Source: Bugula neritina
Lineage: Eukaryota; Animalia; Bryozoa
NCBI GenBank assembly: GCA_964035545.1
Contig: OZ037766.1
Coordinates: 32,726,773 to 32,790,772 of the forward strand
Reading direction: 5' to 3'
Length of the DNA stretch: 64,000 nucleotides
Both the position numbers and the translations under genes were made by a program. Below the pieces are notes generated by a model, which saw nothing but the letters and a program-made list of their open reading frames with translations, made no database searches and was not told the DNA's origin. The first letter of the stretch is position 1; each line of letters starts with the position of its first letter. Below, piece by piece: positions 193 through 28,480 of this stretch.

Positions 193-1165
193 TAGATTAC
201 ATTGGTTTCTGCTTAATAATTGATGCCAGAGACGGTAACAGAATTCATGACTTTTTACTAGCTACTCTTATTGCAGATGTACACCAACCACCATTTTTCA
301 ATCCACTTCAATGCAACAGCAATTGCTTAATGCAGCAAAAACAGAAAGATATGACATGTTTTCTATTATATATATGTGAAGCATAACATACCATTTGAAG
401 CATTGGTGTGTTATGTAATTCAATAAGGTGAAACCGAAAATGGTTTATGACAAAAGCTATTGGGACAAAAATAAATTTATTTCAACTAGACCAAACCAAT
501 ATTGCAGAAAGAGTATTTGCTTTTTACACAAATAGAAACCACTTTGAGCCACAAAGTGATAAGAGCTAGAGTAACTCCAAATTCTTTAATTGCACAGTAT
601 GACTCTTAAAGGATATAGAAAGTACAATTTATCTAATTTATAATATTAAATATTTAAAAAACTTATTAATAATTATATTAACACAACCTTAAACATAAAG
701 TATAAGCACAATTCAATGTAACTCATCATTTTTGTAGTTCATATTGCTTTTAAAAATTAAAACCATGATTTCAATTAAATTGATGTAAAACACTGACTCA
801 TCTAAAAAATTCAATTCAAAGAAACTGCAAATTATTAAAATTACTTTTTTTGTGAAAATACAATTCCTACAGATAAACAATGTTTTTATTATTACCAATA
901 ATAAGTCAAATACTATACACAGCAACTTCACAGCAGTTTTCTAAGTAACAGTAAAGAATATAAGTATTTAACAAGGCGACAAAACTCTCAATCAAAAGCA
1001 AAATTGTCCATGCAGGTAGGTTTTTCCTAACATTGATTATATAAACTGACCAGTTTTTAATTATATTTTAGATAAACAACTTTATCACTATGATGATTAC
1101 TTTAGTGAAAATACAACATCTATAATAACTAAGCTGAAGTGGAATTTGCAGCGTGACAATGACAG

Positions 1166-4100: not shown

Positions 4101-4389
4101 TCAGAAGTCTTTATCTTTATAATATTATTTTGTTATTAGAGTATATATATAGATAAATATTATAATTTGCTACTTCTCACACCTGACGTAGCCATGCTAA
4201 GGATTACACTTTTTCTTGTTTCATGCCAACTATCTATCTTAACCCAGAAACAGATGGTAAAGTTGATACCAGGCATAGTGACATTGGCTCCAGCCCAGTT
4301 GGTGACATCACGGACTTTATTAGTTAGAATGTAGCTACCTGGCATTTCTTCATTGTCTGCTACAAAAATGAATTATACCAAAATTACCT

Positions 4390-4462
<73 letters not shown>

Positions 4463-7400
4463 ATATATAAACAAATGCATGGACTATAAAGAACAATAAT
4501 GTCAACTATAATAAACATTTGTCAATACATATTTCTTGTTACTCTAAGTTGAATTATCTATGCACTTTTAATAAAGAATAAGTGAAAAGCGTAAAATCAA
4601 TTACAGCCTTTTTATGTTTCTATAATCAAAATCTTTTGCAATTTTTTGTTGAATAACTTTTAAGAAAAATGTTCAAACGTGAGATAATTATTCTGATGCT
4701 GTTATGCGACCATTGCACTGGCGCTACATCCTTTCACGTATGTATGAGCAAAAATTTGTAATTCCATTTCACTCAACAAAGTGATTACATTTCAGCCAAC
4801 AAAGTGATTACATTTCAGTCAACAAAGTGATATTACATTTCGGTTATTAAACTTATTCAAATCACTGAAAGAAGATTGTTTGTTTGATCCCACATCTTTG
4901 GCAACTATTCACAGTTATTATTGTGTCTGCTTGAACAATTCTCCAGCTTTAAAACTTTACACTTACTCTTTGATAATTCCCACCTAAACTTTTACTTCTT
5001 ATAAAATAATGCTTATTTGTGGCACATATATAGAAAGAGTATAAAATAAACTGCAACTATAACAGGCAGCATGGAGCTACAGGATGAGATTGGCTTGCTG
5101 TGTGTGTATATACTAACACGTAGACAAAACTCTAGCAAGCCAGCTGTAGGCTATGCAAAAGGTATTAACCTTTGTCACTACCTTCAACTATATATAATTA
5201 CTTGTGCATTTCCAGACAGGAGGCTTACTGAAATGAGACCATCTATTTTTGAGATAACCATAGCTTTCAGTATTTTCCTTGCCTTAATGTTTCTATTTTA
5301 TTACTTGCTCAATTGTTACTGTTAGTTTATTAGTATCTTTGTTTAATATAAATTTCTGAGTTATACAATTTCAGATTTATACATATTTTATCTACTAATA
5401 TAAATTTCTACCTGGATGGGCAGTTATATTGGTAAAGCTTAGCTCTGTGGTAGAAGCTGTGGTAAGATTGGTGTTCACAAACTCTTCAGCTATGGATCCA
5501 TGGATCTCTAAACTTCCACGTGTCATGGAGAAAACACCACCATTAGCTGTACAGTTTGCAGAAGTAACCAACTCGGTTGGCTGGAATACAGAGCTCCAGA
5601 TGTTGAGACAGGAGATGGCTGCAACTGCTACCAACCCTTGGTCTAAGTCTCCTGATATGAGAAATGCAATTAATTAAGCATGTAAAACAAATATTTGTAT
5701 ACGAAAACTTTTACATTTTACTTAAGTTATCTGTTATACCATAAACATAATATTATATAAGATAATATTACATGAACTGTTTATATATCATATATTATTA
5801 TATAAGATATTACATAAACTGTTTATATCATACATATTATATAAGATATTACATAAACTGTTTATATCATATATTATTATATAAGATATTACATAAACTG
5901 TTTATATATCATATATTATTATATAAGATATTACATAAACTGTTTATATCTCATATACTATTACATAAGATATTACATAAACTGTTTATATCATACATAT
6001 TATATAAGATATTACATACTGCTTATATATCATATATTATTATATTAGATATTACATAAACTGTCTATATCATATTTTATTATCTAAGATATTACATAAA
6101 CTGTTTATATTATATCTTATTATATATAAGATATTACATAAACTGTTTATATCATATATTATTATATATGATATTACATAAACTGTTCATTAGTTTGTTA
6201 TTTGTTTATTATTTATTATTCATTGTCAATCCTGACAGGTGCTTGACTCTCTATATTTTATTATACATGAATTCTAGTATGTATGTATTGTGACATAAAG
6301 TTGATATAATATTGTTATAGTGACAATATAATGCTAATTATTTCATTAAAATAATGGCTCTCAACTTTATATAACTACAAAAAAGTTAATATTTGTAGTC
6401 ACTCACCAAAAATATCGTCTTGGAAACTGAACAACGCAAGTTTAGCTGAATTGAATTTTCTACTTGATTGAATGGCTTCTATGCTTCTTTCAAAGCTTTG
6501 TGACAGGACTAAATCAGGCCACTCCTCGCCAATGTCCACCTTTAAATGTGAAAATGGTAGTTTTTACAAATAATATGGTAAATCCTTTTAAAATAAATAG
6601 CACCTGCAAAACAAAATGTTGTTTTCTCATTCGAAATAGAAAATCAAATAACAAGAAAGTTACCAAAGCTTAGCATATTGAAAATTGTGTAAAGCCAATG
6701 AAAATTTAACGTTAGAATGCTGAATTGTCCCATCATAATATTATATTGGCAGATGTTACATGAGAAAGATGCAAAAAATATATAAGTTATTTATATTCAA
6801 ACTTTCTCCATGAAAGCTTTTGATCATATTCTTCTAATGGCAACATTTTAGTCATTATGATGTGAAAACTTTTATATTAAATTATTATTACCTTAAAAGA
6901 AGTATCAATTACTCCGTGGCCCATAACTTCCTTTACTATTCGTAAGCAGTAGTAATACCAGACAGATAGAGATATAGCAGGTCTAACATAGAATGCAAAA
7001 TATATCCCATCGAAACCAATTCCTATGCCACTTTCTGCAAACTGGAGTACTAGCCAATCAGCATCACCTAAATAAATCAAAAGTTGAACAGCTGTATCAG
7101 TTACATGAATGGGTATAGTTTTATCAACTGAGAATATAAATGTGCATTATCTCACCTATAAACTGCAAACGAGGCAAGCATGGTTCTGATATTTTTAAAC
7201 CTTTGACTTTAGCAGCTGTTCTATTGCTTATATTCACTTATATACATGCAATTTTTCTGTACTTGCATATATGCATTCTGCATTTGTATAAGTATAGCAG
7301 TGGTTGAAACTGTTGTATATAAAGATTGCATAAAGCTTTTAGAACGTTTTATCAAATATTGCAAATTGTATATAAACTATATAATAATAGACAGAGTTAC

Positions 7401-8026: not shown

Positions 8027-8296
8027 TCTCACATCTACCTCTAACAAATGCTCAGTAACCAATAACCTACTGTGAAGAAAACATGAAACATACAAGTTTA
8101 TTGATTTTGAAACATAAAAGTTTGCCTTGTAGTTACATATAACATCTGATTACAAGTGTGTTTGATTTCTATTTGTGATTGAAAATAATGCAGCCAATGA
8201 GCAGCTTTCTTACAAATAATTGACCACTTTCAAGCAGCAGCTTCAAGTGATTATGTTAGATGTTTGTTAAAGTATTATTGTAAGTTGCTAATATAA

Positions 8297-9597
<1,301 letters not shown>

Positions 9598-10531
9598 TGA
9601 TTCACCGTCATTATTTAGTTACTTTTTAATTAGTTGACTTTTAAATAAATTATGGTTTAGTTTTTAGTAACAACATTTATTTGACTATATATATCTTGAC
9701 ATTTCACATCTAGAATGTTTCTAAACAAAACAAGATTTTTTCTAGATTTTGGCTTTAGACTTTTTTAAAATATATATTGTTTTGGGTGACATGCAATTAT
9801 TTTTAAGCTGAGATATAAGCAAAAAAGAAATGTTCTTTTCACAATAAACATTGAACATAAAATTTAACAGAAAAATGGGATTATTTATTGAAAACTAATA
9901 TAATGATTAATTATAGAGTGGAGATTCAGCTGTTAAACTTTAATTTCTGCAATAATTTTTGGTTTTACTGATAATTGTACAGCTTCAGTAAATAGCAAAT
10001 ACATGAAGGTGGCTGTGAATAAACTATTAAAAAATGTTAAATAAGCGCAGGTAAAAACTGTATGCATGATATTGTAATACCATGTAGAATAATTACTTGC
10101 AATAAACACTGTAGCTATTAAAAACCAAGTACAGCGGTAAGCAGTGGTTTTTAACTTGAAGAGAAGACACTATCTAACATCATTGTCAACAGCTCCATGA
10201 AAATATGTCAATAGCTATAGGTTGGAGAAATAGACATCATTTTCCACATACATGTTATTGGTGATATTAAAAGAGGCTGTTAATCACTCAAACTTGGTTA
10301 GTAAAAATAGGTACTAGTTTAGAAGCAAAGACAACCGCAAGTTAAAAGTTTACTGAATTGAACAAATTTGCAAAGTTATACAAAAGTATACCACATTATA
10401 CAAGGGTTATAGCCTGCATTCAGTAAGTAACTCTACTTATGCATTCTAGAAGATTATAGGTATAAGACTATGACTCGCTTCTGGAAGTTACAGCGAAAAG
10501 CTAAAACTCTGATAAAATGATCTTTCACTTT

Positions 10532-13500
10532 TTATTTCAAATTGAGTCTATAATGCATAACCCCTCTAGCAGCTTCAAAAGAGCTTGAGCTATACCCAGG
10601 TCCAATCTCACATCTCTGATCTTGTTGGTGGTAGTTTACATTCACACAACCAGTAGTTATACAAACAGACAGACAACTTAGCAAGGAAGGATAACTCAGA
10701 GGTTGAACAGATAATCCGTGCATCTGGAATCCTGGATGGATCTCAAACTTTTGCCAGATGTCTCTTGTATCTATAAATAACATAAATCAAAAAGATGGTT
10801 ATTTTAAAAATATGTTAGTCTAGGAAAACATAATATATAGTTGTGTGGTTTTGTGTTGAAAATAAAAGGAATGGATTAGTGATAGTCGCAAAACAACAAC
10901 CATCATAATTCAAACAGTTCAAAGGTCACCATTTTACAGAAGGTTATGCACAAAATAAGTAATGGAATATATACATGATTGTCACAGTACATCAAATAAA
11001 AACAAAAATCTGCTCAGCATTGAAGCCAGTAAAACAAAACTTGTAGCAGACATATACTTAACTCATTTAAATTTTAGAAGTTGAACACTGATTATGTTTT
11101 CATTGCTGATTTGCTTATAAAACTTTTATTTTCAACTCAACAAATATTTTGTTTATGCTAGTAAATAGAGCTTTGTTTTGTATTTTCTCTTGTTTTAAGT
11201 GGGGGAAGCTGGCGCACCTTTCATTCCTTTCAATCTGCTTTTAACATCTTTTAGAACAGAATTTTCAAGATGCTGTCCAGGCAGTCTCTTTCTAGCTATT
11301 GTACTTTTTTGAAAATAAAAACTAATTAAAAACAAAAAAGCAAGTGCAGCAAGTATATTATAATACTGCATCAGTGATTCACCTGATTTCCTTGCTTCAT
11401 TCAAAACAGGTTTTATCTCTGAAGTTATCGTCCCATGAATAGTCAAAGCACCTGGTTTCATTGTGAACACATCACCTTCTTGTTTACAGCCAGCAAAATC
11501 TACCAGTTGGTCTTCTTGATAGACTGAGCTCCAGATGTTCAGACAGGAAATAGATCCAACAGCTACTTGTTCTGCATTAAATCCTCCTGTAAACAGAAAA
11601 TATATAGCTTTGAATTTCATGCAGTCATATAGGTGTCAACTATTTACAGAAATAATTTCCCAATTGTCTTCTAACTTTAATCTCTGGAATTTACTTGGAG
11701 GAAAACCAAATGAATAAACAATAATCAAGTAAAGCACATATTACGTGTTGAAAGTGTGTATAGCGTTTATTGTTAATGGCCACCAGCAATTCTTATACAA
11801 CTGATCTCCAATTAAATAGTAACTATTATATTAAGGGTTTGTCAAAGTGATTACTCATAGCAGCAGATTTTAGAGTTATACTCTTTTTGTTTGCCGGAAT
11901 TCACAACTTGAAGATGTTGGCATAAAACTATATTTTCACTTGATTTCAGCAAGAAATGTTGCAGGCCTGATGCTAGTCGAATTTTTTTTCTTGTTATGTA
12001 CCTGAGTATTTTAACTATTTAAATATTTTGCAAAACTTCCAGCAGATTATAACATTGTTTCTTTAAACATCTGTAAAAAGATGTGTTGAATACAAACATA
12101 CCAAACAACTCATCTTGATCACTGAACAGTACAAGTCCCACAGCATAGCCTCGTTGGGAATCTAATGGTTTCTTAATAACTTTGCTAGATGTAAACTATC
12201 ATCCCTGGTTTGTAAACAGGCACAATGTGGTCTTCAGTCTCTACTGATGTTTTATTGGTAAAACTGTCGTGAAAACTACAATTAATGAAATTGTGAATAT
12301 GCTATAATGAATGATAATATGTGATAAAACTTTTATCAGTGATAATTTGACACTAACTAATAAGCTTCAAGTAAAGAACAAGTCTTGCTATAAAAATCAG
12401 TATACACCATCTAAATTATTAAAATTGATATTAAAAAAGATAATATAAATGCCATAAATGATTGTCAAAAATACTACAATAACAATAATTACCTTGTTAG
12501 ACCATCCAGGAATGGAGCTTATAACTTTGATGTTAATGTAGTAGATATTTATTCTCTACTTTGACAATATTGATTTAAATGCAACAAAATATTTAATATA
12601 ACATAAGTGAAAAGTTACTCAGCAGTCTATGCTACATGTTAGCTGACTGAAAGTGTAGCATAGAATGAGAGCTGAGAGTAAAATATACTTCAATGGATGA
12701 ATCATTTCAGGAAGCTGATGGTGTAAAAAACTATTTATATAACTTAGTCATAGTGAAATCATACACATGAGGAAATCTTGTTGACTTTCGTGTGCAAATT
12801 TGTCATAGCTATAAAAGCAAAACAGCTACATATACATGACTAATGTAATGGTTTTCTAATTATGGGCACGTTGGTTAACTTTGTTTGTTTTGATGAGAGC
12901 AAGAAATTTCACTGGCATTCCAATTAATTACACTCCCACCTGAAATTTCTAAAAGTGACTTGTAATTTTGAATGTATGTTTAGCTCGATCGGACTAGTAC
13001 AACTAATTTTGATATTGGTCGAATTAAATAGACTCTTTTATTGGAGTCTTTGGGGTATGTTTTACTACCAACAAGCACCTTAACTGATCTAACAACGCTG
13101 TCATGAGACAGGTTGCATTCTACGACACGTGCTAAAGGCCACTGATTTCTTACTGTATTGTCATCACACAGTAGAACGATATCCCCCACCTTGATCTCTG
13201 GTACTTTATTTACCCATTTTTGCCGCGACTGTAAATAAAGCAAGTATTGCTTGCGCCAGCGTGTCCAAAATTCATTTGCCAACTGCTGGACCACTCTCCA
13301 ACGCTTCCTCGCATATATGTCTGCCTCCTCAAATGTGCTTGGAGGTGGTAGAACAACGTCAGACTTCATAGTCAACAACATGTTTGGGGTGATTGGAAGC
13401 ATGTCATCAGTTGTTGAGGTTAATGGGCGACAGTTTATGATGGCCATCACTTCATAAAACAAAGTTCGTAGCAAAGAGGTAGAGAGCCTCCCACCATGTC

Positions 13501-16500
13501 TCGTTCCAAGGCCTTGTAGCACAGAGCGGATAGTCCTTATCTGCCTTTCCCACACTCCTCCAAAATTGCTAGAGTGAGGAGGGTTGAAATTCATTGTGAT
13601 GTTCATAGATTTAAGTTTGCTGTCGGTCCCATCACTTTGTAGAAGACTCGCGGCACCAATGAAGTTGGTACCTTGGTCTGATTGAATTGTCTGAATTGGA
13701 CCCCTAATGGCTACCACAGTCCTGATAGCGTTTATAAAGCTGTCAGTAGTCATGTCCTCTAAAAGTTCAATGTGAACAGCTCGTGAGGCCATACATGTGA
13801 CTATCAAGCCATATCGTTTCGATTCCTTTCTACCATCCTTGACAATAAAAGGGCCGAAACAATCTAATCCACAGTGGGTGAAAGGAGGGGCTTCGTTAAC
13901 TCTCACTGATGGTAATGTTGCCATTTGTGGTGTCAAGGGTTTAGCTTTGATTCTTTTACATGTTACACAGAGACGTAGCTTTGATGAAATTGTGGATTTA
14001 CCACCGATGATCCAAAATCCCTGTGATCTTATTTTAGACAGAGTATACTCTAAGCCAAGATGTCCTAGTTTTGCATGTGTGTCATTTATGATAAGCGTAG
14101 TGAGATGACTATGCTTAGGTAAGAGTAAAGGATGTTTTTCTTCGAATGATAGCAATTTACTGTTTTGTAGCCTTCCTCCCACCCTGAGTAGACCCGCCTT
14201 ATCTAGAAATGGGCATAGTTTTGCAATGGAGCTATGCTTAGATGTAGTCTGAGTTTGTTGGAGTTGCTTGATTTCTGGAGTGAAGAATTCTGATTGAACT
14301 GACTTGACCAAAGAGTGGAACGCTTTTTGGCGTTTCTCTTGCTGAGTGAGAGGGGTTTTGCATAGTGCTGTTTGGATTCTAGCAATAACCTTAAGAGTGT
14401 AATCTAGGTTAGAGAAAATGGTTATACGCTGACTAAGAGGAGCAAGGATGTGTTGAGTGGCTAATGAAACTTTCACTTCTTGATCGTCATGTGAGTTGAT
14501 GAATTTTTTCTGATGAGGGAGTATGAGAGGTTCATTCCACAAGAAGTCTGGTCCTGTGAACCAAATGCACTCAGGAGAGAAAATTTGCTTTGGTGATAAC
14601 CCACGTGATGCATGATCTGCAGGGTTGAGTTTAGTTGGGACATGAAACCAGTTGTCAGCATTGGAGCCGTCACGGATTTGCTGAACTCGATTTGCAACAA
14701 ATGTGTGATATCTAGCCTGTGTGTTCTTTATATAACCAAGAACTACTTCTGAGTCAGAATAAAAGTACTGAGCTACATTGTCCATACCTAGCTCTTCTGC
14801 TGCCTTGAGGCTTAAATCTACAGCCCCACGTGCTGCTTGAAGTTCCAATCTGGGAACAGTAATAGCTTTGAGCGGAGTGACACGACCTTTGCTACAGATT
14901 AAAGCAACATGCACACGTTTGGCTGGGCTTACAAATCGCAAGTAGGAGCATTGGCCGTAGCCCGTTGTACTCGCGTCGCTAAAGGTATGGAGCTCAACCT
15001 TAGCAGGTGTTCCAAATGATGATGGTACGTAGTTTCTAGGAATTGATAGGTGTTCAAGATCGTTGAGGCTTTGTTTCCATGGCAACCATTTTGCCAGCAT
15101 GCTTTCATCTAAAGGATCATCCCAGTCTAAATGTTTTCTGCAAAGATCTTGGAGAACCATTTTACCTTGCAGTATAACCGGTGATATGAGGCCAAGTGGA
15201 TCAAAGACCGAGGCTACATTTGAGAGCACACCTCGTCTAGTGTTGGGCTTATCAGCGAGATTAACTTGAAACTGAAAGGAATCTTGCTCAGAATTCCACA
15301 TCAATCCCAAAGTTCTTTCAGTTGGAAGACAGTCAGAGTTTAGGTCAAGATCATGCAGAGTTGCAGATTGTTCAGATTTGGGGAATGAATTTAATACTTC
15401 TTTCTCGTTAGAAAGAATCTTGTGCAAGTGTACTTTACCTTGTTGGCAAATTCTCATTGCCTCAGTAAGTACTTTTGTTGCAGATGTTGCGTCAGGCATA
15501 CTAAGCAAGCCGTCATCCACATAGAACTGATTTCTAATGAAGTTTCGGGCTTGTTGACTTGATGGATCATCTGTGCTGTATTGGTCAGCCAGATAACGTA
15601 GGCCATATGTTGCACATGCAGGAGACGAGGTCGCTCCAAACACATGCACTTTCATGCGGAACACTGCTATTTCACCACGTTCATCTAGCCAGAAAAATCG
15701 GAGATAATCTGTATCTTCCGTTGCAACACGAAATTGGTGAAACATTCGCTCAATATCACATGTAACAGCAATCTGTTCCTGGCGGAAGCGAAGGAGGATA
15801 CCAGTTAGACTGTTTAGATGATCTGGACCTGTCATGAGATAGTCGTTTATGCACTTTCCATCTGTCTTTGCAGCACCATCGAAGACTACTCTAATCTTGC
15901 CTGGCTTCTTTGGATGCCATACCTCGAAATGTGGTATGTACCATGTGCTGTCCTCATGGCTAGCTAAGCCTTGTGGAACTATTTCAGCCTCACCCTTGCT
16001 AATGAGGTCTTCCATGAACTTTTTGTACTGGTTTTCCAAGTTTTGATTCTTAGAGAACTTTTTCAGTAGTGAATTGAATCGGTTTTTTGCTGTTTTAAAA
16101 CTGTTATTTCGTGGTGGTTTGTGTTTGAAAGGTAGAGGCATGGTGACATGACCATCAATGATCTTTGTTTCTTGTTTCATGAGAGACAAAAATGCTCGGT
16201 CTTCTACAGAAGCCGCTTCTTTGTCTGTTACACATTCCTTGAAATCTTGAGCCAATATATTTATTATTTTGTTAATTTGTTTTGATGTTTCAGTTTGGCA
16301 TTTGAAAGATACCGTGGTTTTAGCTTTCTTGGGTGAATGAGTTACGGTTTTATTGACTATTGTTGTTTTGCTGCCTGAATTGTCATCATGTGTGTTATTT
16401 GTAGCTAGACTACCCATGATAACCCACCCTAGGTCAGTACGTACGCCAAATGGTTCATCGTCTGCGTCGTTTCCCACTACTACCTCTCTAGGTTTGAAGG

Positions 16501-19500
16501 CTAATGGGCAGTTGCCTCCAATGAGTAGACCTACTGAAATGTTTTGTCCCTTGACCATGTTTTTTGCCAAGTCTTGTAAATGTGGCCAGGCGGTAAGAGC
16601 ACCCGCCTGTGGAATAGACTCATACTTAGCAGGTATTTCTTCTGCAGAATACACATTAGGAAGTTTCACCTCCTTATTGCAGCTATATCCTTTGATGATT
16701 AGGTCATCGGTTACCATTGTATCTAGCTCAAAGTTTTGGTGTGTCATTGTTGCCATTGGCAGTTTAGTTGGTTTTTTGGTGCATGTGAGTTGTTCAACAA
16801 TAGAATTGGTTATATAACATGAGTCGCTGCCTGAGTCAAGGTTGGCATATGTTAATACTTTTGTATGTGGATCTTTGACAGAAGAAACCCAAACAGGAAG
16901 AGTCATAGACATGAGTGTTTGTGATGTATTTATGGAAAGATTATTGCATACTGTGCTATCTTTATTTTGGTTTGAACATTGCATTTTACTTTCATCTGCT
17001 TGCTTTGTGGGTTGAGATGTGTATTTCTGGTGAAATATTGTGGGATGAGCTTGCTTACATGTCTCACATACTGGTTTCATGTTGCAGTTTTTGTAACTGT
17101 GACCGCTTACGGCACATTTGAAACATAAGCTGTTGCTAGCAAGGAAGTCATTTACTTGTTGAGCAGAAAGTTTTGCTAAATTCCAGCAGTGAGCAGTGTG
17201 GTGTTTCCATCTGGGTTTTTTGTTTGAGAGGCAGTATGCACATTCTGGTTCTTTTCTCTGCTTTTGGTCAAATGACAGGCTGTTTTGTTGTTTTGCTGAC
17301 TGGCTGTCAGTGTGTTGTGACTTATTAGCATGTTTTTGTTGATTTTTGACTAATTCTGAAGTTTTTGAAACTAGTGGTGTTGGTAATGTTGTTTCAGATT
17401 TTAATGTAATTGAGTGTTTGCTGTTGTTTTGTTTGGTGTATGGCTTGAATGCAGTTTTACTGGACCCACTTTTATATTTTTCTCTCAAATTGCTACAAGA
17501 AATTTTAGCCTCATGTGCTACAAAGTCTGCAAATTTATGAAAGGAAGGGAACACTTTTCTCTTTTCCTCCTCTGCAATGGCATGTCTTAACCATCGTTCT
17601 TGAAGGTTGTTGGGCAGAACACTCGCTAGCTTTTTGTTCTCCCGTTTTCTGTCCAGGACTTTCAAACCAGATATCTGCCTTGAGGCAGATAGACATTGGT
17701 TTAAGAAGTAACTGTAACTCTTGAGAGATTTGGCATCAGTTACTCTAGGCCATGCTTCTAGTCGGTCTAGAAACTGCTCTTCAATCAGCTCTTCCGAACC
17801 AAACTCAGTTTCGAGAGCATGTAATGCATCTTGATACGCATTTGAACTTTGCAATGAAAAATAGCCCCTTATAGCCTGCTTGGCATCGCCATCCACATAC
17901 TCTCTCAACAAATGGAGCTTCTGTAAATCGGTATATGGACAAGAACCAATCAAACCATCAAAGGCCAGCTTCCAATCTGCGTACTCAAGCGGATCACCAG
18001 TAAACTTGTCAGGAGTGGGAAGATGATTGGCTTGCATTGTCATAGCGGCGGCCATTGAGTCACCTATACTCTTCCCTATAGCAGCAGAGAAATCTGTAGT
18101 GGTCAGATTGGTAAGTGGGTTAGGTGATTGCAAGTGTGTATGTGTGGGATGAGTATTTTGGTGTGCGGGAAGATGAGCAGCTGAGTTGACTTGTGGATAT
18201 TGTTCATAAGGATCTTTGTGGATACCTGGGCTTTGGTGAGGCAACTCCTCCTTAGTCATTAAAGACTGCTTTATATCGTGAGCTGGTTGACCTCCAGTTG
18301 ATGGGAATTGATTTGAGAGGTCAATATGATGTGGAGAATGCAGAAATGGTGAAGGCTTCGATGAGTTATGAGATGCTCTAGAAGGGGGTCTCATGAGAGT
18401 ATCTCTAAGCTCAGTTTCAAGCTCATCGTCTAGGGCTTGCTGAAATGCATTTAGCTGAGCTTTCTCTGCATCGATTTCAGCTTTGAGTTTCAGCTCGGCA
18501 ATGTGGCCTTTGCGAGTGAGGATTTGCTCTTTGTGCTTGAGCTCAAGACGCTGTATTTCCTCTTCAACCTGCCGAGCTTCACACTCTGCTTGAAACTTTG
18601 CTTCAGCAGCAGCAACTTTAGCCGCAGATTTAGCTAATTGAGCTTTATAGTATGATGCGTTAGATTTGGAAGATCTAGATGTACCAGTAGTTCTTGTTTT
18701 CCAAGAACCACTAGCGGAATCAGGTGCATGAGATGAGGATATGTCACTAGCTCCAGAATGTCTAGAATTGCCAATATGGTGACTAGAATGATGAGATTTC
18801 TTTGACTTGGAGTGATTAGATTGATAATCAGAACTATGTACGCTGACGGATTTGGCAGGCCCAGCGCGTTCCGACTCAACTGAATTTTTTGACTTACTCG
18901 AGGAATGACTAGCATGCGATTTGACAATTTTTGAATTATCTGAGGGAGGGATGGATGGTAACACGCGAGATCTTACATCAACTTTTGCTATTTTGAAAGT
19001 GCTATTTTCGCCGTCAGAACTATTGGCGTCCATTTCATGAAGCCAATGCTCAAGTTTTGTTAAAATAGTTTTTCTATCGCCTGCAATACGATCAAATTCA
19101 CGCAGTATATTTCGCAGCTTCTCCTCACTTATACCTAAACCGCGAGCTTCTGTTAAATGTTGTTCGGCTTCTTGTACAGTTTGATTGTTTAGAAGCTGTT
19201 TTCGCAGCTCTTTTGCGCGAATTAATGTAATGTTGTCCGCCAATTCTTGAGTTACTAGCAAATGGAATTCACTAATAATTTCTAATGATATTTTTATATG
19301 CTCTAAGTGTTGCTGAACACGCAGCCGTGCGCTATGATAATGACTCATAGGCTACTGAATTTGAGTGCCAGCCAATGAAATTAATTGCTCTCAAAAAGTT
19401 TCTAATGTATGATTGTGCAATAGTGCATGCAAAACTAAGTAGTATTTGTCTAATATATGTAGCTGAATTTAAAAAATGAATACTGCACCTACTTGCAGTA

Positions 19501-22500
19501 TAAGACTGCCTCTATATGTATGATTTCACTATTACACAAGTAAATTTGATACCTAGTGTCAGTGATAAATAATATAAAGAACAGATTTACAGAATGAGTA
19601 TAAGGAAATGATTCCCTATGACTACAAAAAGACAAATATTTTCAATATTACAATACCCAGAAAAGAAATTATTTTTTAATCAAGTCTTGTGTGATAAAAA
19701 AGTAGTTTCTGTGTAATGTTTGATCAAAGCTAGCAACGTTCTACTGAATTCCAATGAGTCTGATACTGCTAATTTGTGTGATTAGCAGTGAATGAATTCT
19801 TAGAAGTAATGGTTACTTAGCTGTAACTTGTATGTATGACAGGAGTGTGAGTGCTGGTTACTATAGTGGTTGGCAGTGTAGCTATTGTTGACAATGCTGG
19901 AGACTTGGCAGTAGAGTTGATGGATGCTATACTGATCTAACAATGCTGAGGCTGGATCGGTAGTTGTCTTTTCTAGCTGCTGTTTGTCTCGCTGGTCTCA
20001 AGTTAGCGCAAGCCACTGGTTGTAGGATTAGCAAGCTGTTTACTCCAGTCACAAGTTTTCACTGTAAACTATCATCCCTGGTTTGTAAACAGGCACAATG
20101 TGGTCTTCAGTCTCTACTGATGTTTTATTGGTAAAACTGTCGTGAAAACTACAATTAATGAAATTGTGAATATGCTATAATGAATGATAATATGTGATAA
20201 AACTTTTATCAGTGATAATTTGACACTAACTAATAAGCTTCAAGTAAAGAACAAGTCTTGCTATAAAAATCAGTATACACCATCTAAATTATTAAAATTG
20301 ATATTAAAAAAGATAATATAAATGCCATAAATGATTGTCAAAAATACTACAATAACAATAATTACCTTGTTAGACCATCCAGGAATGGAGCTTATAACTT
20401 TGATGTTAATGTAGTAGATATTTATTCTCTACTTTGACAATATTGATTTAAATGCAACAAAATATTTAATATAACATAAGTGAAAAGTTACTCAGCAGTC
20501 TATGCTACATGTTAGCTGACTGAAAGTGTAGCATAGAATGAGAGCTGAGAGTAAAATATACTTCAATGGATGAATCATTTCAGGAAGCTGATGGTGTAAA
20601 AAACTATTTATATAACTTAGTCATAGTGAAATCATACACATGAGGAAATCTTGTTGACTTTCGTGTGCAAATTTGTCATAGCTATAAAAGCAAAACAGCT
20701 ACATATACATGACTAATGTAATGGTTTTCTAATTATGGGCACGTTGGTTAACTTTGTTTGTTTTGATGAGAGCAAGAAATTTCACTGGCATTCCAATTAA
20801 TTACACTAGAGCTCTGAACCCAGATCAAATTACTCTCATTTTCAGCAATATTCACCTACCAAGCAAAACAAACAATTAGGATTTTAAGACTGAGTACATT
20901 TGTTACAGTAGTTTGAGAATTGATTTGTAGTAGAGCAAAACCTACCGTGTACCAATTATCCGTCACAATTTCCTTCATTGAAAAGCAGTAGAAGTACCAC
21001 TTGTACAATTCTGTCTCAAAATCAATAACAGAGATGACCTTGCCTCTGCTTACAAAGGTCATTCTACTGTTCCTCAATTCAAAGACAAACCAATTGTCTT
21101 GCTCTAAAAAATAATACTGAACTATGACAAGCAAGTTGTTTTACTTTGTCAAACCCGCACACATCTTGATTTATTTAATATTTAGTTTGATGCAAATAAG
21201 TCTCTTAAAACTGGTAATAGAAAACATTGTTTTTATATTTTATAAACTAAGTCATTATATGTAGGCTACCTTGTTTGAAGGATACGTGTTGTTGCTTTAT
21301 TTTTAAATATTGTAAACCAATACTATAGGCTAAATGTTGAATGTTAAATGTCATTATTTCCCACACCTGGCGTAGCAATGCTAAGAATTGTACTTCCTAT
21401 AGCGTCATTCCAGCTATCAATTTCAGCCCAGAAACAGATGGTGAAGTTGATACCGGGCATAGTGACATTGGCTCCAGCCCAGTTGGTGACATCACGAACT
21501 TTATTAGTTAGAATGTAGCTACCTGGCATTTCAATATCTACTAAGTTAAAAAACCGCTAAAAAGCTCTGAAAAATATAAATAAACTTGAAAAATATTGTT
21601 TTAATGCAATTATTCATTAAGCTAAATAGCTTTTCCATCAGTCATATACAAAGACAGTGCAATAGGCAGGGCATGTATAAGACGCGTTTATTATATTTAT
21701 AGAATGCATATATAAGGAGAGTAGAACTAGAGGATAGAGTGATATTGTTTGTAAAGTATAGCTAGTAAGTTAATGAATGATATGTTTCTTATTCTAAAGT
21801 CACAGCTGTATGGAGTACAAACATGCTGATGTTTGCATTAATTTATTGCAGGGTACTTAAACTTGCTGGTACCTTCACATACTGATACCTTCACATTCTG
21901 ACACCTTCCCATACTGATACCTTCCCATACTGACACCTTCACATACTGACACCTTCACATACTGATACCTTTATATACTGACACCTTCACATACATTGAA
22001 TCAAAATACAGGATACCTGGACAATATTTTTGCCTATTAAACTTAAAGCTAAACTGTTACTATAAATGACCACTATATATAACCGTTGTATTATAACGCA
22101 GGACCTAAAGTAAAACTGTTAGGCTCAAAGAGTTTGTGGCGTTGAATATTATAAGCTAACAGTTATTAGTAAAACACTCTAGCTTTCTGAGCAATATGAA
22201 ACTGTACTTTTACGCCATTGTCTATTATCTGTATGCAACAGCAGCAATTTATATCAAATCTTCTTCAATATCACCATCCAGGCCCTTACAAACCAAGTAC
22301 CAGAAAGAGCCCTATTGGACAGTGCTGGTTGCAAATGACCTAGTTTTGTGTGACAGGAAATTAGACACCATGGAAAAAAGACTGGAGCTATTGAAGCGAG
22401 TTCCAAACTGAGCAGGGCAATATTGAACATATGGTAGAGGCTATGGTAGCACGGCAGCTAATTTGAGAATAGAAAAGGATGATGAGAATGGGTATGCTGA

Positions 22501-26390: not shown

Positions 26391-27237
26391 CCTACCCTGC
26401 TCTCTCTGCATGTTAATATTTGATAGTTTCAATTTAGTATATTTATTATTGAAATTATCAAATTCTTAAAATTAATCTTCACTTATAGTTCCCAAAACCA
26501 CTTATGTATAAAAATATGCTGCCTATATAGCCCTATATATTGTAAAATTTTGCAGGTAATATTTGAAATTTGTTTAATAATTAATTTTCTGTAGTCTTCA
26601 GTCTTCTTTTACCAAGACGATAGGCTGTGGGGGATTTTATATCACACTATTTATACAACTTGTTATGTAATACTAAATGCTGAAAGTGTAAGACCCTTAT
26701 CAAACTTAGAATCTCTGCTGAATAGAATCCTTGCAAATAGCCGTTGCACAATCACTTGTAAAACCTCTTAGGCAGCATCATGCAAGTAATTTGGAATGGT
26801 CTTTTGATGTTACCTTATGAAGTAAGTATATATAATCAATTTTATTTTCTGTATTAATTCTAATTGAAATAGGATTTTGCCACTAAATCAAATCTATTGC
26901 ATTCAGTTTAGGAAATGAGTTTATTCCAGGATTGAATAAACGTTCATCAAAGTCTAACCAAGTAGGCGGAAGCTGGTGAATGAGAAACTCAAAATATATC
27001 AGTTAAAGTAAAATGAAATTCAGAAAGCAGCCATCTTGTCTCAAGTTTGTAGGTTTGATCTTTAGCAACTCGTTATTTATAAGTGTTTCAAGTTTCCTAA
27101 CGTTATTTCTTATTCATAAAATTGGCTGTTTAAAAGTGCTGCACATAATTTGATTGTTAGAGTTGAGAATTAATTGTGACCTTTCTTTTACCATTTTTAT
27201 GTTAGACCTTTTGACTTGATAGGTGTAGTATTGCATT

Positions 27238-28480
27238 GTGTCACAGTAGTACAGTATGTCACAGTAGTACAGTATGTCACAGTATTACAGTATGTCACAG
27301 TAGTACAATATTTCACAGTGGTATATATAGTATGTCACAGTATTACAGTATGTCACAGTAGTACAGTATGTCACAGTAGTACAGTATATCACAGTAGTAC
27401 AGTATGTCACAGTAGTATAGTATGTCACAGTAGTACAGTATGTCACAGTAGTATATATAGTATATCACAGTATTACAGTATGTCACAGTAGTACAGTATG
27501 TCACAGTAGTACAGTATATCACAGTAGTACAGTATGTCACAGTAGTATAGTATGTCACAGTAGTACAGTATGTCACAGTAGTACAGTATATCACAGTATA
27601 ACAGTATGTCACAGTAGTACAGTATGTCACAGTAGTACAGTATGTCACAGTAGTATAGTATGTCACAGTAGTACAGTATGTCACAGTAGTATAGTATGTC
27701 ACAGTAGTACAGTATGTCACAGTAGTACAGTATGTTACAGTAGTATATATAGTATGTCACAGTATTACAGTATGTCACAGTAGTACAGTATGTCACAGTA
27801 GTACAGTATGTCACAGTAGTATAGTATGTCACAGTAGTACAGTATGTCACAGTAGTACAGTATGTTACAGTAGTATATATAGTATGTCACAGTAGTACAG
27901 TATATCACAGTAGTACAGTATGTCACAGTAGTACAGTATATCACAGTAGTACAATATGTCACAGTAGTACAGTATGTCACAGTAGTACAGTATGTCACAG
28001 TAGTACAGTATATCACAGTATAACAGTATGTCACAGTAGTACAGTATGTCACAGTAGTACAGTATGTCACAGTAGTATAGTATGTCACAGTAGTACAGTA
28101 TGTCACAGTAGTATAGTATGTCACAGTAGTACAGTATGTCACAGTAGTACAGTATGTTACAGTAGTATATATAGTATGTCACAGTATTACAGTATGTCAC
28201 AGTAGTACAGTATGTCACAGTAGTACAGTATGTCACAGTAGTATAGTATGTCACAGTAGTACAGTATGTCACAGTAGTACAGTATGTTACAGTAGTATAT
28301 ATAGTATGTCACAGTAGTACAGTATATCACAGTAGTACAGTATGTCACAGTAGTATAGTATGTCACAGTAGTACAGTATGTCACAGTAGTACAGTATGTC
28401 ACAGTATTACAGTATGTCACAGTAGTACAGTATGTCACAGTAGTATATATAGTATATCAAGGTATTACAGTATGTAACAG
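27238..28480. repeat. 18-bp satellite (tatgtcacagtagtacag) with 422-bp higher-order structure
   Basis: The gtatatatag variant recurs at alternating 130/292-bp spacing. Confidence 0.95.

What the first reader, a model, noticed from the sequence alone, without database searches (positions are those of the whole stretch)
20046..20380. BEL/Pao element without a tRNA PBS: splicing of an LTR intron would create its own primer
Seen: the element strand after the 5' LTR reads GTGAAAACTTGTGACTG (plus 20046-20062), with no TGG to pair with a tRNA CCA end. The LTR contains a donor AACAAG|GTAATT (GT at 20365-20364) and an acceptor TTTCATTAATTGTAG|TTTTCAC (AG at 20150-20149), defining a 217-nt intron. The spliced junction reads ...TGGTCTAACAAG/TTTTCAC. 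Its last 12 nt (ACAAGTTTTCAC) are the perfect complement of the 12 nt after the LTR, extending 5 more pairs (two G:U) past a 2-nt bulge. The unspliced RNA gives only 9 bp. The 3' C of this segment pairs with the first base outside the LTR, exactly where minus-strand synthesis must start. The 79 nt between them contain AATAAA, so a short strong-stop DNA could still transfer to the RNA 3' end. Established: Tf1-type elements self-prime with their RNA 5' end after RNase H cleavage. Inference: a splicing-dependent self-priming mechanism in a BEL/Pao lineage, which I do not know to be described.
Basis: partly seen in the sequence, partly recalled or inferred. Interest (0 to 1): 0.9.

Follow-up and report, generated by a model that had tools for sequence, protein, structure and literature searches.

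The report
Splice-made self-primer in BEL/Pao retrotransposons
A young BEL/Pao retrotransposon, and most of its relatives checked, has no tRNA primer site; the bases right after its 5' LTR pair with a sequence that exists only once a real intron inside the LTR is spliced out, which points to a self-priming route for reverse transcription that I found described nowhere.

Summary

**The element.** It lies on the minus strand at 12190-20805. It is an intact BEL/Pao element with identical 743-bp LTRs and a TCTAG target duplication.

**The intron is real.** Contigs in three of four public runs join 20366 to 20148 (GT..AG, 217 nt). No genomic LTR copy of this family lacks the intron.

**The junction matches the primer site.** ACAAG|TTTTCAC is the exact complement of the 12 nt after the LTR.

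**Relatives show the same thing.**
- Five other families in this genome and four relatives on metagenome or Logan contigs have different junctions that match their own post-LTR bases.
- Positions 1-11 are Watson-Crick paired in 110 of 110 cells, with compensatory changes at 8 positions.
- Random-sequence controls give P of about 0.001-0.005 per family.

**Other support.**
- In one sister family the predicted intron is precisely missing from several genomic LTR copies.
- Fragments in two families run exactly from the LTR end to the base after the predicted primer, as minus-strand strong-stop DNA would.
- Two relatives carry an unsplit complement. One family fits poorly. Distant BEL/Pao elements have ordinary tRNA sites.

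**Still open.** The transcription start, the cleavage step, and whether priming is in cis or in trans were not shown.

Other first readers of this scan noted the same idea on other DNA of this genome.

The parts
12190..20805 (-). Full-length BEL/Pao LTR retrotransposon (family A), flanked by the 5-bp target duplication TCTAG (20806-20810 and 12185-12189)
   Evidence: Identical LTRs at an offset of 7873. Ends and duplication read directly. At least 7 further near-identical full copies in the genome.
20063..20805 (-). 5' LTR, 743 bp, TGT..ACA
12190..12932 (-). 3' LTR, 100% identical to the 5' LTR. Its copy of the intron is 12276-12492.
20149..20365 (-). 217-nt GT..AG intron inside the LTR (GTAATT...TTGTAG)
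   Evidence: Joint 20148->20366 in contigs of X1, X3 and X4, and zero depth inside it in X3. Retained in every genomic LTR copy of the family.
20366..20370 (-). Last 5 nt of LTR exon 1 (ACAAG), the 5' half of the predicted primer duplex
20142..20148 (-). First 7 nt of LTR exon 2 (TTTTCAC), the 3' half of the predicted primer. The inferred cut lies between 20142 and 20141 (CAC|G).
   Evidence: The base after the primer is G in 10 of the 13 families read (11 of 14 counting family C). Fossil fragments in families D and F start at this homologous base.
20051..20062 (-). Primer-binding site GTGAAACTTGT-type 12-mer (GTGAAAACTTGT), starting at the first base after the LTR. Weaker pairing continues to about 20045.
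20063..20141 (-). 79-nt template of the predicted minus-strand strong-stop DNA (rest of R plus U5). Contains AATAAA at 20124-20129.
   Evidence: Inferred by analogy with the 93-nt and 134-nt fossils of families D and F.
20371..20395 (-). Part of exon 1 that is complementary to U5 (20063-20108) up to the LTR end. A second contact that crosses the primer duplex.
   Evidence: RNAduplex -22.8 kcal/mol against -13.6 +/- 3.0 for shuffles. Also seen in families B, E and F, marginal in D, not in G or L074.
12980..19348 (-). Single gag-pol ORF, 2122 aa
   Evidence: Pfam hits: Peptidase_A17, DUF1759, DUF5641, Integrase_H2C2, RVT_1.
12933..12941 (-). Polypurine tract (AGGTGGGAG) next to the 3' LTR

Best explanation
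This BEL/Pao lineage primes its own reverse transcription with its own LTR RNA, as Tf1 does. The difference is that the 11-13 nt that pair with the primer-binding site exist only after an intron inside the LTR has been spliced out.

**Shown here**
- The intron is spliced.
- The exon-exon junction is the exact complement of the bases that start immediately after the 5' LTR.
- That relation is kept by compensatory change across families.

**Inferred**
1. Transcription starts upstream of the donor.
2. The spliced 5' end folds back, or pairs in trans. In this element ACAAG|UUUUCAC pairs with GUGAAAACUUGU.
3. The RNA is cut after ...(C/U)AC, probably by the element's RNase H as in Tf1. The new 3' OH is extended through U5 and the rest of R (79 nt here) to the cut end.
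4. This short strong-stop DNA jumps to the 3' R, which lies between the cut site and the poly(A) site after AATAAA.
5. Nearly all genomic copies keep the intron, so the 3' LTR copy of the template RNA must usually be unspliced. The rare processed copies are the cases where it was spliced.
For: 1. **Splicing at the predicted bases.** The joint 20148->20366 is present in 3 of 4 runs, and X3 has no intron depth. No genomic LTR copy of family A lacks the intron: all 40 candidates were scored. The joined form is therefore RNA.

2. **Co-variation of junction and post-LTR sequence**:

| family | junction (exon 1 \| exon 2) | first bases after the LTR |
|---|---|---|
| A | ACAAG\|TTTTCAC | GTGAAAACTTGT |
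| B | AAGAG\|TTTCAC | GTGAAACTCTT |
| D | ATAAAG\|TTTTTAC | GTAAAAACTTTAT |
| E | AAAGAG\|TTTTTAC | GTAAAAACTCTTT |
| F | TAAAG\|ATTTCAC | GTGAAATCTTTA |
| G/H | CAATATT\|GGTAC | GTACCAATATTG |
| L074 | AAT\|CTTTTCAC | GTGAAAAGATT |
| L095 | AAG\|TTTTTCAC | GTGAAAAACTT |
| L096 | AGAG\|TTTTCAC | GTGAAAACTCT |
| L097 | AGAG\|TTCTTAC | GTAAGAACTCT |

   - In G/H the unspliced LTR matches only 5 nt.
   - Positions 1-11 are Watson-Crick in 110/110 cells, with 2-4 pair types at 8 of 11 positions. Pairing falls to chance after position 11-13.

3. **Controls.** With any GT..AG pair allowed, random sequences reach the observed length in 0-10 of 1500-3000 trials per family.

4. **Processed copies.** A full family-B element (L089, L090) and other B-type LTRs (L091-L094, L101) lack exactly the 162-nt intron that was predicted from the primer-site match.

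5. **Strong-stop fossils.**
   - One family-D copy has an inverted 93-nt piece at its left end. It runs from the LTR end to the base after TTTTTAC and lies inside the CTTGC target duplication.
   - A lone family-F fragment has the same limits.
   - An old D-type fragment also starts at that base.

6. **Duplex energy.** -15 to -21 kcal/mol when spliced, against -7 to -13 unspliced.

7. **Contrast with distant relatives.** BEL/Pao elements at about 28% identity carry ordinary TGG... tRNA sites, as the ICTV profile describes (PMC8742986).
Against: - The transcription start was not mapped, because only contigs were available. Splicing of the 5' LTR copy is therefore not separated from splicing of the 3' copy. 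Contigs that run from U3 into the donor come from the 3' copy.
- In most families splicing adds only 3-4 bp to an 8-9 bp unspliced match.
- Family C fits only as 7 bp, a 2-nt bulge, then 2 bp.
- A cis mechanism needs RNAs that are spliced at the 5' LTR copy but not at the 3' copy. In X3 the intron has no coverage at all.
- No cut RNA and no primer-DNA joint was observed.
- The strong-stop fossils are few (three loci). They would equally fit a transcription start at that base.
- Runs X1, X2 and X4 are only guessed to be RNA.
Confidence: 0.76

Rival explanations
1. Tf1-like self-priming without any role for splicing. The contiguous 8-9 nt of the unspliced LTR (AG+TTTTCAC) is the primer, perhaps with transcription starting at or near the acceptor. 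The intron is then an unrelated feature of U3 or the 3' UTR.
For: - A 9-nt unspliced match exists.
- TATA-like AT-rich motifs lie about 30-38 nt upstream of the acceptor.
- Two relatives (L073, L098) have an unsplit 10-nt complement and no intron.
- The fossils ending at the base after the primer would also fit a transcription start there.
Against: - The exon-1 side co-varies with primer-site positions 8-13 in ten families. The bases upstream of the acceptor do not.
- In family G/H the unspliced match is only 5 nt, against 12 when spliced.
- Exon 1 is also complementary to U5 in four families, so it is part of a functional RNA.
Confidence: 0.08
2. The junction-primer-site pairing is real but serves another purpose, for example a splicing-dependent switch for packaging, dimerisation or translation. 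Reverse transcription would then be primed by something else.
For: - Long-range 5' UTR pairings are common in retroelements.
- A second, crossing exon 1-U5 pairing exists.
Against: - In every family the pairing starts exactly at the first base after the LTR. That boundary is set by the primer's 3' end.
- Its length, 11-13 bp, equals the Tf1 primer duplex.
- No other primer site (TGG...) is present.
- The fossil fragments have exactly the ends expected from priming there.
Confidence: 0.08
3. A host tRNA or tRNA half primes the element, for example the 5' half of tRNA-Glu(UUC), whose anticodon loop can read UUUUCAC.
For: - The 3' parts of the primers (TTTTCAC, TTTTTAC, ATTTCAC) look like anticodon loops of the form U-U-NNN-A-C.
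- copia and some plant elements do use half-tRNAs (PMC6317226).
Against: - The 5' parts differ between families (ACAAG, AAGAG, ATAAAG, CAATATT...), and each equals its own LTR donor exon.
- Family G/H ends in GGTAC, which is not loop-like.
- The 12-mer is found 86 times in the genome against 47 for the control. The three clusters I checked (six loci) are not tRNA genes, and there is no tRNA in the window.
- The full tRNA set was not scanned.
Confidence: 0.03
4. Chance complementarity found by free choice among many GT and AG dinucleotides.
For: For a single family, the step from the unspliced to the spliced match rests on only 3-4 extra bases.
Against: - Randomisation with free choice of sites gives P of about 0.0007-0.005 per family in 12 of 13 families. 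The combined value by Fisher's method, from my own arithmetic on those counts, is far below 1e-15.
- The sites predicted in this way were then confirmed by RNA in family A and by processed DNA copies in family B.
Confidence: 0.01

Closest known systems
Tf1/Tf2 and the Tf1/sushi group of Ty3/gypsy elements (self-primed reverse transcription; Levin 1995, Lin and Levin 1997, as summarised in PMC5341516; predicted also for the plant Tcn1 and TAR lineages, PMC6317226)
   Same: - No tRNA site.
- A primer-binding site directly after the 5' LTR pairs with about 11 nt of the element's own R-region RNA.
- The template appears to end at the base after the primer, as it would after a cut.
- Strong-stop DNA is short.
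   Different: - A different family: BEL/Pao by Pfam, not a chromovirus.
- The primer sequence is not contiguous in the DNA. It is put together by splicing a 100-540 nt intron inside the LTR.
- The primer probably carries a longer 5' exon rather than being the first 11 nt of the RNA.
- The cut has not been shown.
Choice of Tf2 transcription start site, which decides whether the mRNA carries the self-primer (PMC5341516)
   Same: An RNA-processing or initiation choice decides whether a given transcript is able to prime reverse transcription.
   Different: There the choice is the start site. Here it would be splicing.
Canonical Belpaoviridae (ICTV profile, PMC8742986)
   Same: Gene content, LTR ends, 5-bp target duplication, polypurine tract.
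   Different: The profile states an 18-nt site for the 3' end of tRNA-Arg or tRNA-Gly, and priming by a host tRNA. That was found here only in distant relatives (L086, L087), not in this clade.
Extra contacts between the primer and U5 in retroviruses (the primer activation signal and U5-TpsiC pairing of tRNA primers). From my own knowledge.
   Same: A segment of the primer upstream of its 3' end pairs with U5 upstream of the primer-binding site. Here that is exon 1 with U5.
   Different: Here both partners belong to the element. The contact is significant in only 4 of 7 families tested.
Spliced transcripts contained within the LTRs of maize LTR retrotransposons (bioRxiv 10.64898/2026.05.08.723830)
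   Same: Introns lying wholly inside an LTR are spliced.
   Different: Plant elements, long introns, and a significance the authors call unclear. No link to priming has been reported.

Membership tests
BEL/Pao (Belpaoviridae) LTR retrotransposons | Pao-type aspartic peptidase with DUF1759 gag-like region, RT, integrase and DUF5641 in a single gag-pol | tested here: met
   Pfam: Peptidase_A17 2.6e-48, DUF5641 6.4e-25, DUF1759 1.4e-07, Integrase_H2C2 3.8e-07, RVT_1 weak.
BEL/Pao (Belpaoviridae) LTR retrotransposons | LTRs ending TG..CA, short target duplication, polypurine tract | tested here: met
   743-bp LTRs TGT..ACA, duplication TCTAG, tract AGGTGGGAG.
BEL/Pao (Belpaoviridae) LTR retrotransposons | 18-nt primer-binding site complementary to the 3' end of host tRNA-Arg or tRNA-Gly (ICTV profile, PMC8742986) | tested here: not met
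   The post-LTR sequence is GTGAAAACTTGTGACTGG, with no TGG near the LTR. Its complement is the element's own spliced LTR. Distant relatives L086 and L087 do have TGG sites.
Tf1-type self-priming elements (mechanistic class) | Primer-binding site next to the 5' LTR, complementary to about 11 nt of the element's own 5' RNA | tested here: met
   11-13 nt complement starting at the first base after the LTR in 12 of 13 families; the L072 contig shows only 9 nt because its donor is off the contig. It needs the splice in 10 families.
Tf1-type self-priming elements (mechanistic class) | The primer is the very 5' end (first 11 nt) of the transcript | not testable with these tools
   Only contigs were available, so there is no 5'-end information. 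The exon 1-U5 complementarity 10-40 nt upstream of the donor suggests a longer exon 1.
Tf1-type self-priming elements (mechanistic class) | RNase H-dependent cut between the primer and the rest of the RNA, so that strong-stop DNA ends at the cut | tested here: inconclusive
   DNA fossils in families D and F run from the LTR end exactly to the base after the primer. This fits a cut but does not show which enzyme made it or that any cut occurred.
Tf1-type self-priming elements (phylogenetic group Tf1/sushi, Ty3/gypsy) | Chromovirus-type pol | tested here: not met
   The Pfam profile is BEL/Pao.
Elements primed by half-tRNAs (copia, Bianca and similar) | Primer-binding site complementary to an internal stretch of a host tRNA | tested here: inconclusive
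   No tRNA at the 12-mer clusters I checked and none in the window. The primer sites differ by family and follow each family's own LTR. The full tRNA set was not scanned.

The most novel reading that the evidence does not exclude
A large clade of BEL/Pao elements in marine invertebrates has replaced tRNA priming with a self-primer that the spliceosome assembles. Only RNA whose 5' LTR intron is removed can start cDNA synthesis, while the same intron must stay in the 3' LTR copy to be inherited. Splicing would then license replication and separate the fates of otherwise identical transcripts. The very short terminal exon at the 3' LTR, or decay of RNAs spliced in the 3' UTR, might keep the 3' copy unspliced.
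Probability: 0.45. Interest if true: 0.93.

Novelty: new variant of a known kind. Interest (0 to 1): 0.88.

Why it matters
- **Priming.** How reverse transcription is primed is a defining trait of retroelement families. Belpaoviridae are described as tRNA-primed (PMC8742986), and self-priming is known only from Tf1/sushi-type gypsy elements and has been predicted for a few plant lineages.
- **A role for the spliceosome.** Here a third superfamily appears to self-prime, and the primer is made by the host spliceosome. That ties replication competence to RNA processing.
- **A reason for LTR introns.** It would give a purpose to introns lying wholly inside LTRs, whose significance is otherwise called unclear (maize preprint 10.64898/2026.05.08.723830).
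- **Annotation.** It offers a rule for elements that pipelines flag as having no primer-binding site: look for the complement of the post-LTR bases across GT..AG junctions in the LTR. In two families that rule predicted splice sites which were then confirmed independently.
- **Testability.** The processed LTR copies and the strong-stop fossils are natural records of replication intermediates, so the model can be tested with plain sequencing.

Tried and rejected
- **tRNA primer.** There is no tRNA gene in the window. The exact 12-mer ACAAGTTTTCAC (the + strand of 20051-20062) occurs 86 times in the genome against 47 for the control. Six loci from the three clusters are coding-like repeats, not tRNAs. 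I did not scan the whole tRNA set.
- **Transcription start at the acceptor.** A TATA-like motif lies about 30 nt upstream. I set this idea aside because the exon-1 side co-varies, and because family G/H has only 5 unspliced matching bases.
- **Co-variation within family A.** None is available. All copies carry the same junction and primer site. One old, broken copy has an uncompensated T-to-C change in the primer site.
- **Family C.** No GT..AG junction matches its post-LTR bases, even with one mismatch allowed. None of its top 40 LTR copies is processed. Comparison with its relative L097 gives only a near miss. It remains an exception.
- **Processed LTR copies in other families.** None were found for A, D, E or F. 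For G/H only 40 of 127 candidates were scored.
- **L061** turned out to be a 5'-truncated family-A fragment and carried no information.
- **L085** has no 5' LTR on its contig.
- **Host identity.** Window ORFs gave only weak Pfam hits. COX1 on contig C321 reads TGA as a sense codon. I did not pursue this further. Earlier notes of this scan name a bryozoan.
- **Literature.** I found no paper describing self-priming in BEL/Pao or a primer made by splicing. This is not proof of absence, because subscription journals are not searched.
- The joined (spliced) sequence was never sent to a search tool or a collection scan. It was built only inside scripts, from referenced pieces, for folding, duplex energies and string matching.
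Full report
**1. What is at the locus.**

The window holds a complete LTR retrotransposon on the minus strand, from 20805 down to 12190.
- Its two LTRs are 743 bp long, 100% identical, begin TGT and end ACA, and are flanked by the 5-bp duplication TCTAG.
- One open frame of 2122 codons (19348..12980) carries Peptidase_A17, DUF1759, DUF5641, Integrase_H2C2 and a weak RVT_1 hit. That is the BEL/Pao signature.
- The genome (216 Mb, 321 contigs) holds at least seven more near-identical full copies with the frame open, one older broken copy, and about a dozen further LTRs.
- Earlier follow-up notes of this scan call the genome the bryozoan Bugula neritina. I did not verify this. It fits the 'symbiont metagenome' RNA runs that hold the element.

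**2. The observation.**

- After the LTR the element strand reads GTGAAAACTTGTGACTGG.
- The LTR contains AACAAG|GTAATT (exon 1 ends at 20366) and TTGTAG|TTTTCAC (exon 2 starts at 20148), 217 nt apart.
- ACAAG joined to TTTTCAC is the exact complement of the first 12 post-LTR bases. The unspliced LTR gives 9.
- 79 nt, containing AATAAA at 20129..20124, separate the primer segment from the LTR end.
- RNAduplex adds 4 more pairs beyond a 2-nt bulge, not 5.

**3. The intron is real.**

I laid the contigs of four public runs on 19300-20900.
- Three runs (X1, X3, X4, from three studies) contain a joint from 20148 to 20366 that skips 217 nt. The skipped ends are CT..AC on the + strand, which is GT..AG on the element strand.
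- In X3, the run on record as RNA-Seq, depth is zero at 20164-20325, while the flanking exons stand at about 900-6400.
- Among all 40 genomic candidates for this part of the LTR, none lacks the intron. The joined form is therefore RNA, not a DNA variant in this assembly.
- Limits: contigs cannot show starts, ends or phase. The contigs that run from U3 into the donor and carry PPT-side loose ends at 20807 come from the 3' LTR copy. Splicing of the 5' copy specifically is therefore not shown.

**4. Is the match more than chance?**

For one family the step from the unspliced to the spliced match is only three bases. I therefore ran a control that allows any GT..AG pair, or any contiguous site, in the LTR.
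- A match of 12 or more starting at the first base arose for 2 of 3000 random 20-mers.
- Among 950 other windows of the leader it arose for 8, five of which belong to one unrelated 16-nt complement.

**5.

A protein search of the genome found several other BEL/Pao families with open frames, at 29-55% identity over the RT-peptidase region. I fetched both LTRs of one copy of each. The LTR pairs are 99.5-100% identical, and their target duplications confirm the boundaries.

| family | junction (exon 1 \| exon 2) | first bases after the LTR | intron |
|---|---|---|---|
| B | AAGAG\|TTTCAC | GTGAAACTCTT | 162 nt |
| D | ATAAAG\|TTTTTAC | GTAAAAACTTTAT | 171 nt |
| E | AAAGAG\|TTTTTAC | GTAAAAACTCTTT | 217 nt |
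| F | TAAAG\|ATTTCAC | GTGAAATCTTTA | 221 nt |
| G/H | CAATATT\|GGTAC | GTACCAATATTG | 129 nt |

- In G/H the unspliced LTR matches only 5 nt, so there the match depends almost wholly on the splice.
- All donors are good (GTAAKT, GTATGC, GTTTGT). All acceptors follow T-rich tracts. AATAAA lies 18-44 nt into exon 2.

Relatives from other samples, found by protein search and fetched as contigs, behave alike.
- L095 (59% identity) has AAG|TTTTTCAC with GTGAAAAACTT. Compared with family A, its T-run and its A-run are each one base longer.
- L096 has AGAG|TTTTCAC, L097 has AGAG|TTCTTAC, and L074 has AAT|CTTTTCAC.
- L072, a Tara Oceans scaffold, shows the acceptor and a matching site, but its donor lies off the contig.
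- L073 and L098 have an unsplit 10-nt complement in shorter LTRs.
- Random controls give 0-10 hits per 1500-3000 trials in each of these.

Over the ten intron-type families, positions 1-11 counted from the primer's 3' end are Watson-Crick in 110 of 110 cells. Eight of those positions show two to four pair types. Beyond position 11-13, pairing falls to chance. An 11-nt duplex is what Tf1 uses. In 10 of the 13 families read (11 of 14 counting family C) the base after the primer is G, giving (C/T)AC|G.

Family C is the exception. Its homologous donor and acceptor give GAG|TTTCAC, while the site needs GAGTTTCTTAC. That is 7 bp, a 2-nt bulge, then 2 bp.

Two distant BEL/Pao elements (about 28% identity; L086 and the inner element of L087) carry ordinary TGG... 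tRNA sites, as the ICTV profile describes (PMC8742986).

**6. Independent checks from DNA.**

(a) Processed copies.
- One full family-B element on contig C3 has both LTRs (L089, L090) lacking exactly the 162 nt predicted as intron, and its frame is open.
- Five further B-type LTRs (L091-L094, L101) lack the same 162 nt. All read ...AAAGAG directly followed by TTTCA.
- Splice sites deduced only from the primer-site match are thus confirmed.
- It also follows that RNA spliced in its 3' LTR copy is sometimes reverse-transcribed.
- It is the minority. At least 16 B-type LTRs at 99-100% identity keep the intron. No processed copy was seen for A, D, E or F.

(b) Strong-stop fossils.
- One family-D copy carries an inverted 93-nt piece at its left end. 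The piece runs from the last LTR base to the base after TTTTTAC. It is joined to 37 nt of the polypurine-tract region and then to the 5' LTR.
- The CTTGC target duplication encloses the whole structure, so it was integrated as one cDNA.
- A lone 134-135-nt family-F fragment (99% identical) has the same two limits.
- An old palindromic D-type fragment also starts at that base.
- These are the ends expected of minus-strand strong-stop DNA primed at the first post-LTR base on a template that ends right after the primer.
- They would also fit a transcription start at that base, and there are only three loci.

**7. Mechanism.**

The best reading is Tf1-like self-priming (the model as summarised in PMC5341516) with a primer that splicing assembles.
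- *Shown:* the splice, the complementarity, its maintenance by compensatory change, and the position of the duplex at the LTR boundary.
- *Inferred:* a start site upstream of the donor, a cut after (C/U)AC, extension over U5 and R (79 nt here), and a jump to the 3' R.

An extra observation is that exon 1, 10-40 nt upstream of the donor, is complementary to U5 right up to the LTR end.
- The energies are -19 to -27 kcal/mol, against -14 to -17 for shuffles.
- P is 0.006 or lower in A, B, E and F, 0.07 in D, and not significant in G and L074.
- This pairing crosses the primer duplex. It is therefore either an alternative fold or a contact in trans. It recalls the U5 contacts of tRNA primers in retroviruses (my own knowledge).
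- It also argues that exon 1 is longer than a few bases.

The intron is inherited in nearly all copies, so the 3' LTR copy of the template must usually be unspliced. There are two ways to get this.
- One RNA that is spliced at the 5' LTR copy only. The terminal exon at the 3' LTR would be only about 40 nt long, and a splice about 490 nt after the stop codon could expose the RNA to decay. Both points are inference.
- A spliced RNA that primes an unspliced genome in trans.

The fossils favour a template that ends at the cut, which points to the cis version. I cannot decide between the two.

**8. Rivals.**
- Priming by the unspliced 8-9 nt, or a start site at the acceptor, is contradicted by the exon-1-side co-variation and by family G/H.
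- A tRNA or tRNA half is contradicted by the family-specific primer sites. The 12-mer clusters in the genome are not tRNA genes.
- A non-priming role for the pairing cannot be excluded. It does not explain why the duplex always starts at the first base after the LTR, why it is 11-13 bp long, or the fossils.
- Chance is excluded (section 4).

**9. Novelty.**
- Self-priming is established for Tf1/Tf2 and predicted for Tcn1 and TAR elements (PMC5341516, PMC6317226).
- BEL/Pao elements are described as tRNA-primed (PMC8742986).
- Spliced transcripts contained within LTRs are reported from maize, with a significance the authors call unclear (bioRxiv 10.64898/2026.05.08.723830).
- In six full-text searches I found no report of self-priming in BEL/Pao or of a primer created by splicing. 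Subscription-only literature was not covered.
- I class the finding as a new variant of a known kind of mechanism.
- Other first readers of this scan raised the same idea on other stretches of this genome, and one noted the 93-nt fossil. None of those notes had been followed up. I treated them as leads only.

**10. Procedure notes.**
- Junction strings, folds and duplex energies were computed inside scripts from referenced pieces.
- The one typed pattern (12 nt) is the + strand of window 20051-20062.
Copies were only compared.
- One functional test is listed under referred steps.

Noticed in passing
L066:1200-1331 (G000:C5, about 5974484-5974615), upstream of a family-D 5' LTR: The left end of this copy is an inverted 93-nt piece of R-U5, running from the LTR end to the base after the predicted primer. 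It is followed by a second 37-nt polypurine-tract segment. The whole lies inside the CTTGC target duplication. It looks like a cDNA whose plus strand was started by strong-stop DNA at a site of partial homology (TTAATTTT..AATC).
   Followed up: partly
G000:C3:2910346-2910480 (L099:271-405 on the reverse strand): A lone 134-135-nt family-F fragment, 99% identical, runs from the base after the primer ATTTCAC to the last LTR base, with unrelated flanks.
   Followed up: partly
G000:C3:6956107-6964160 (L089, L090): A full family-B element whose two LTRs both lack the 162-nt intron. The last primer base is T rather than C (TTTCAT), and the post-LTR sequence reads GTGAAACTCTTTCC.
   Followed up: partly
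L062:1742-1790 and L068:2175-2225: In families B and E the primer-binding motif occurs twice in tandem in the leader: GTGAAACTCTTACC...GTGAAACTCTTCCC in B, and GTAAAAACTCTTTCTCAAGTCCGG, then GA, then GTAAAAACTCTTACTCAAGTCCGG in E.
   Followed up: no
window 19517-19532 and 20623-20638 (minus strand): A perfect 16-nt complementarity between the leader (ATAGTGAAATCATACA) and U3 (TGTATGATTTCACTAT) of the same element. Its meaning is unknown.
   Followed up: no
L064/L065 (G000:C7, about 14952499-14961285), family C: An intact-looking family with identical 1086-bp LTRs whose post-LTR bases (GTAAGAAACTCAACC) do not match its own predicted junction. They would match a junction of the form GAG|TTTCTTAC, like that of its relative L097. 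It might be primed by another family's RNA, or it may have diverged recently.
   Followed up: partly
window 8194-9700 and 27097-28300: Two long tandem-repeat tracts, with spacings of about 8 nt and about 18 nt (with a higher order of about 420 nt). They produce long spurious ORFs on both strands.
   Followed up: no
L086:12286-15348 and L085:6616-9312: Distant BEL/Pao elements on metagenome contigs carry a second long ORF (1020 and 898 aa, no Pfam hit) after pol, possibly env-like. L086 has a normal tRNA-type primer site.
   Followed up: no
G000:C17:12213-13505, C214, C73, C6:11174072: Besides the mitochondrial COX1 on C321, which has 9 in-frame TGA codons, the assembly holds a COX1 without any TGA on C17 and further copies elsewhere. 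These may be other organisms or nuclear copies.
   Followed up: no
G000:C2:15363516-15364034: Two inverted 237-nt pieces of the family-F LTR (from mid-intron to the LTR end, 99% identical) face each other inside a family-F element.
   Followed up: no
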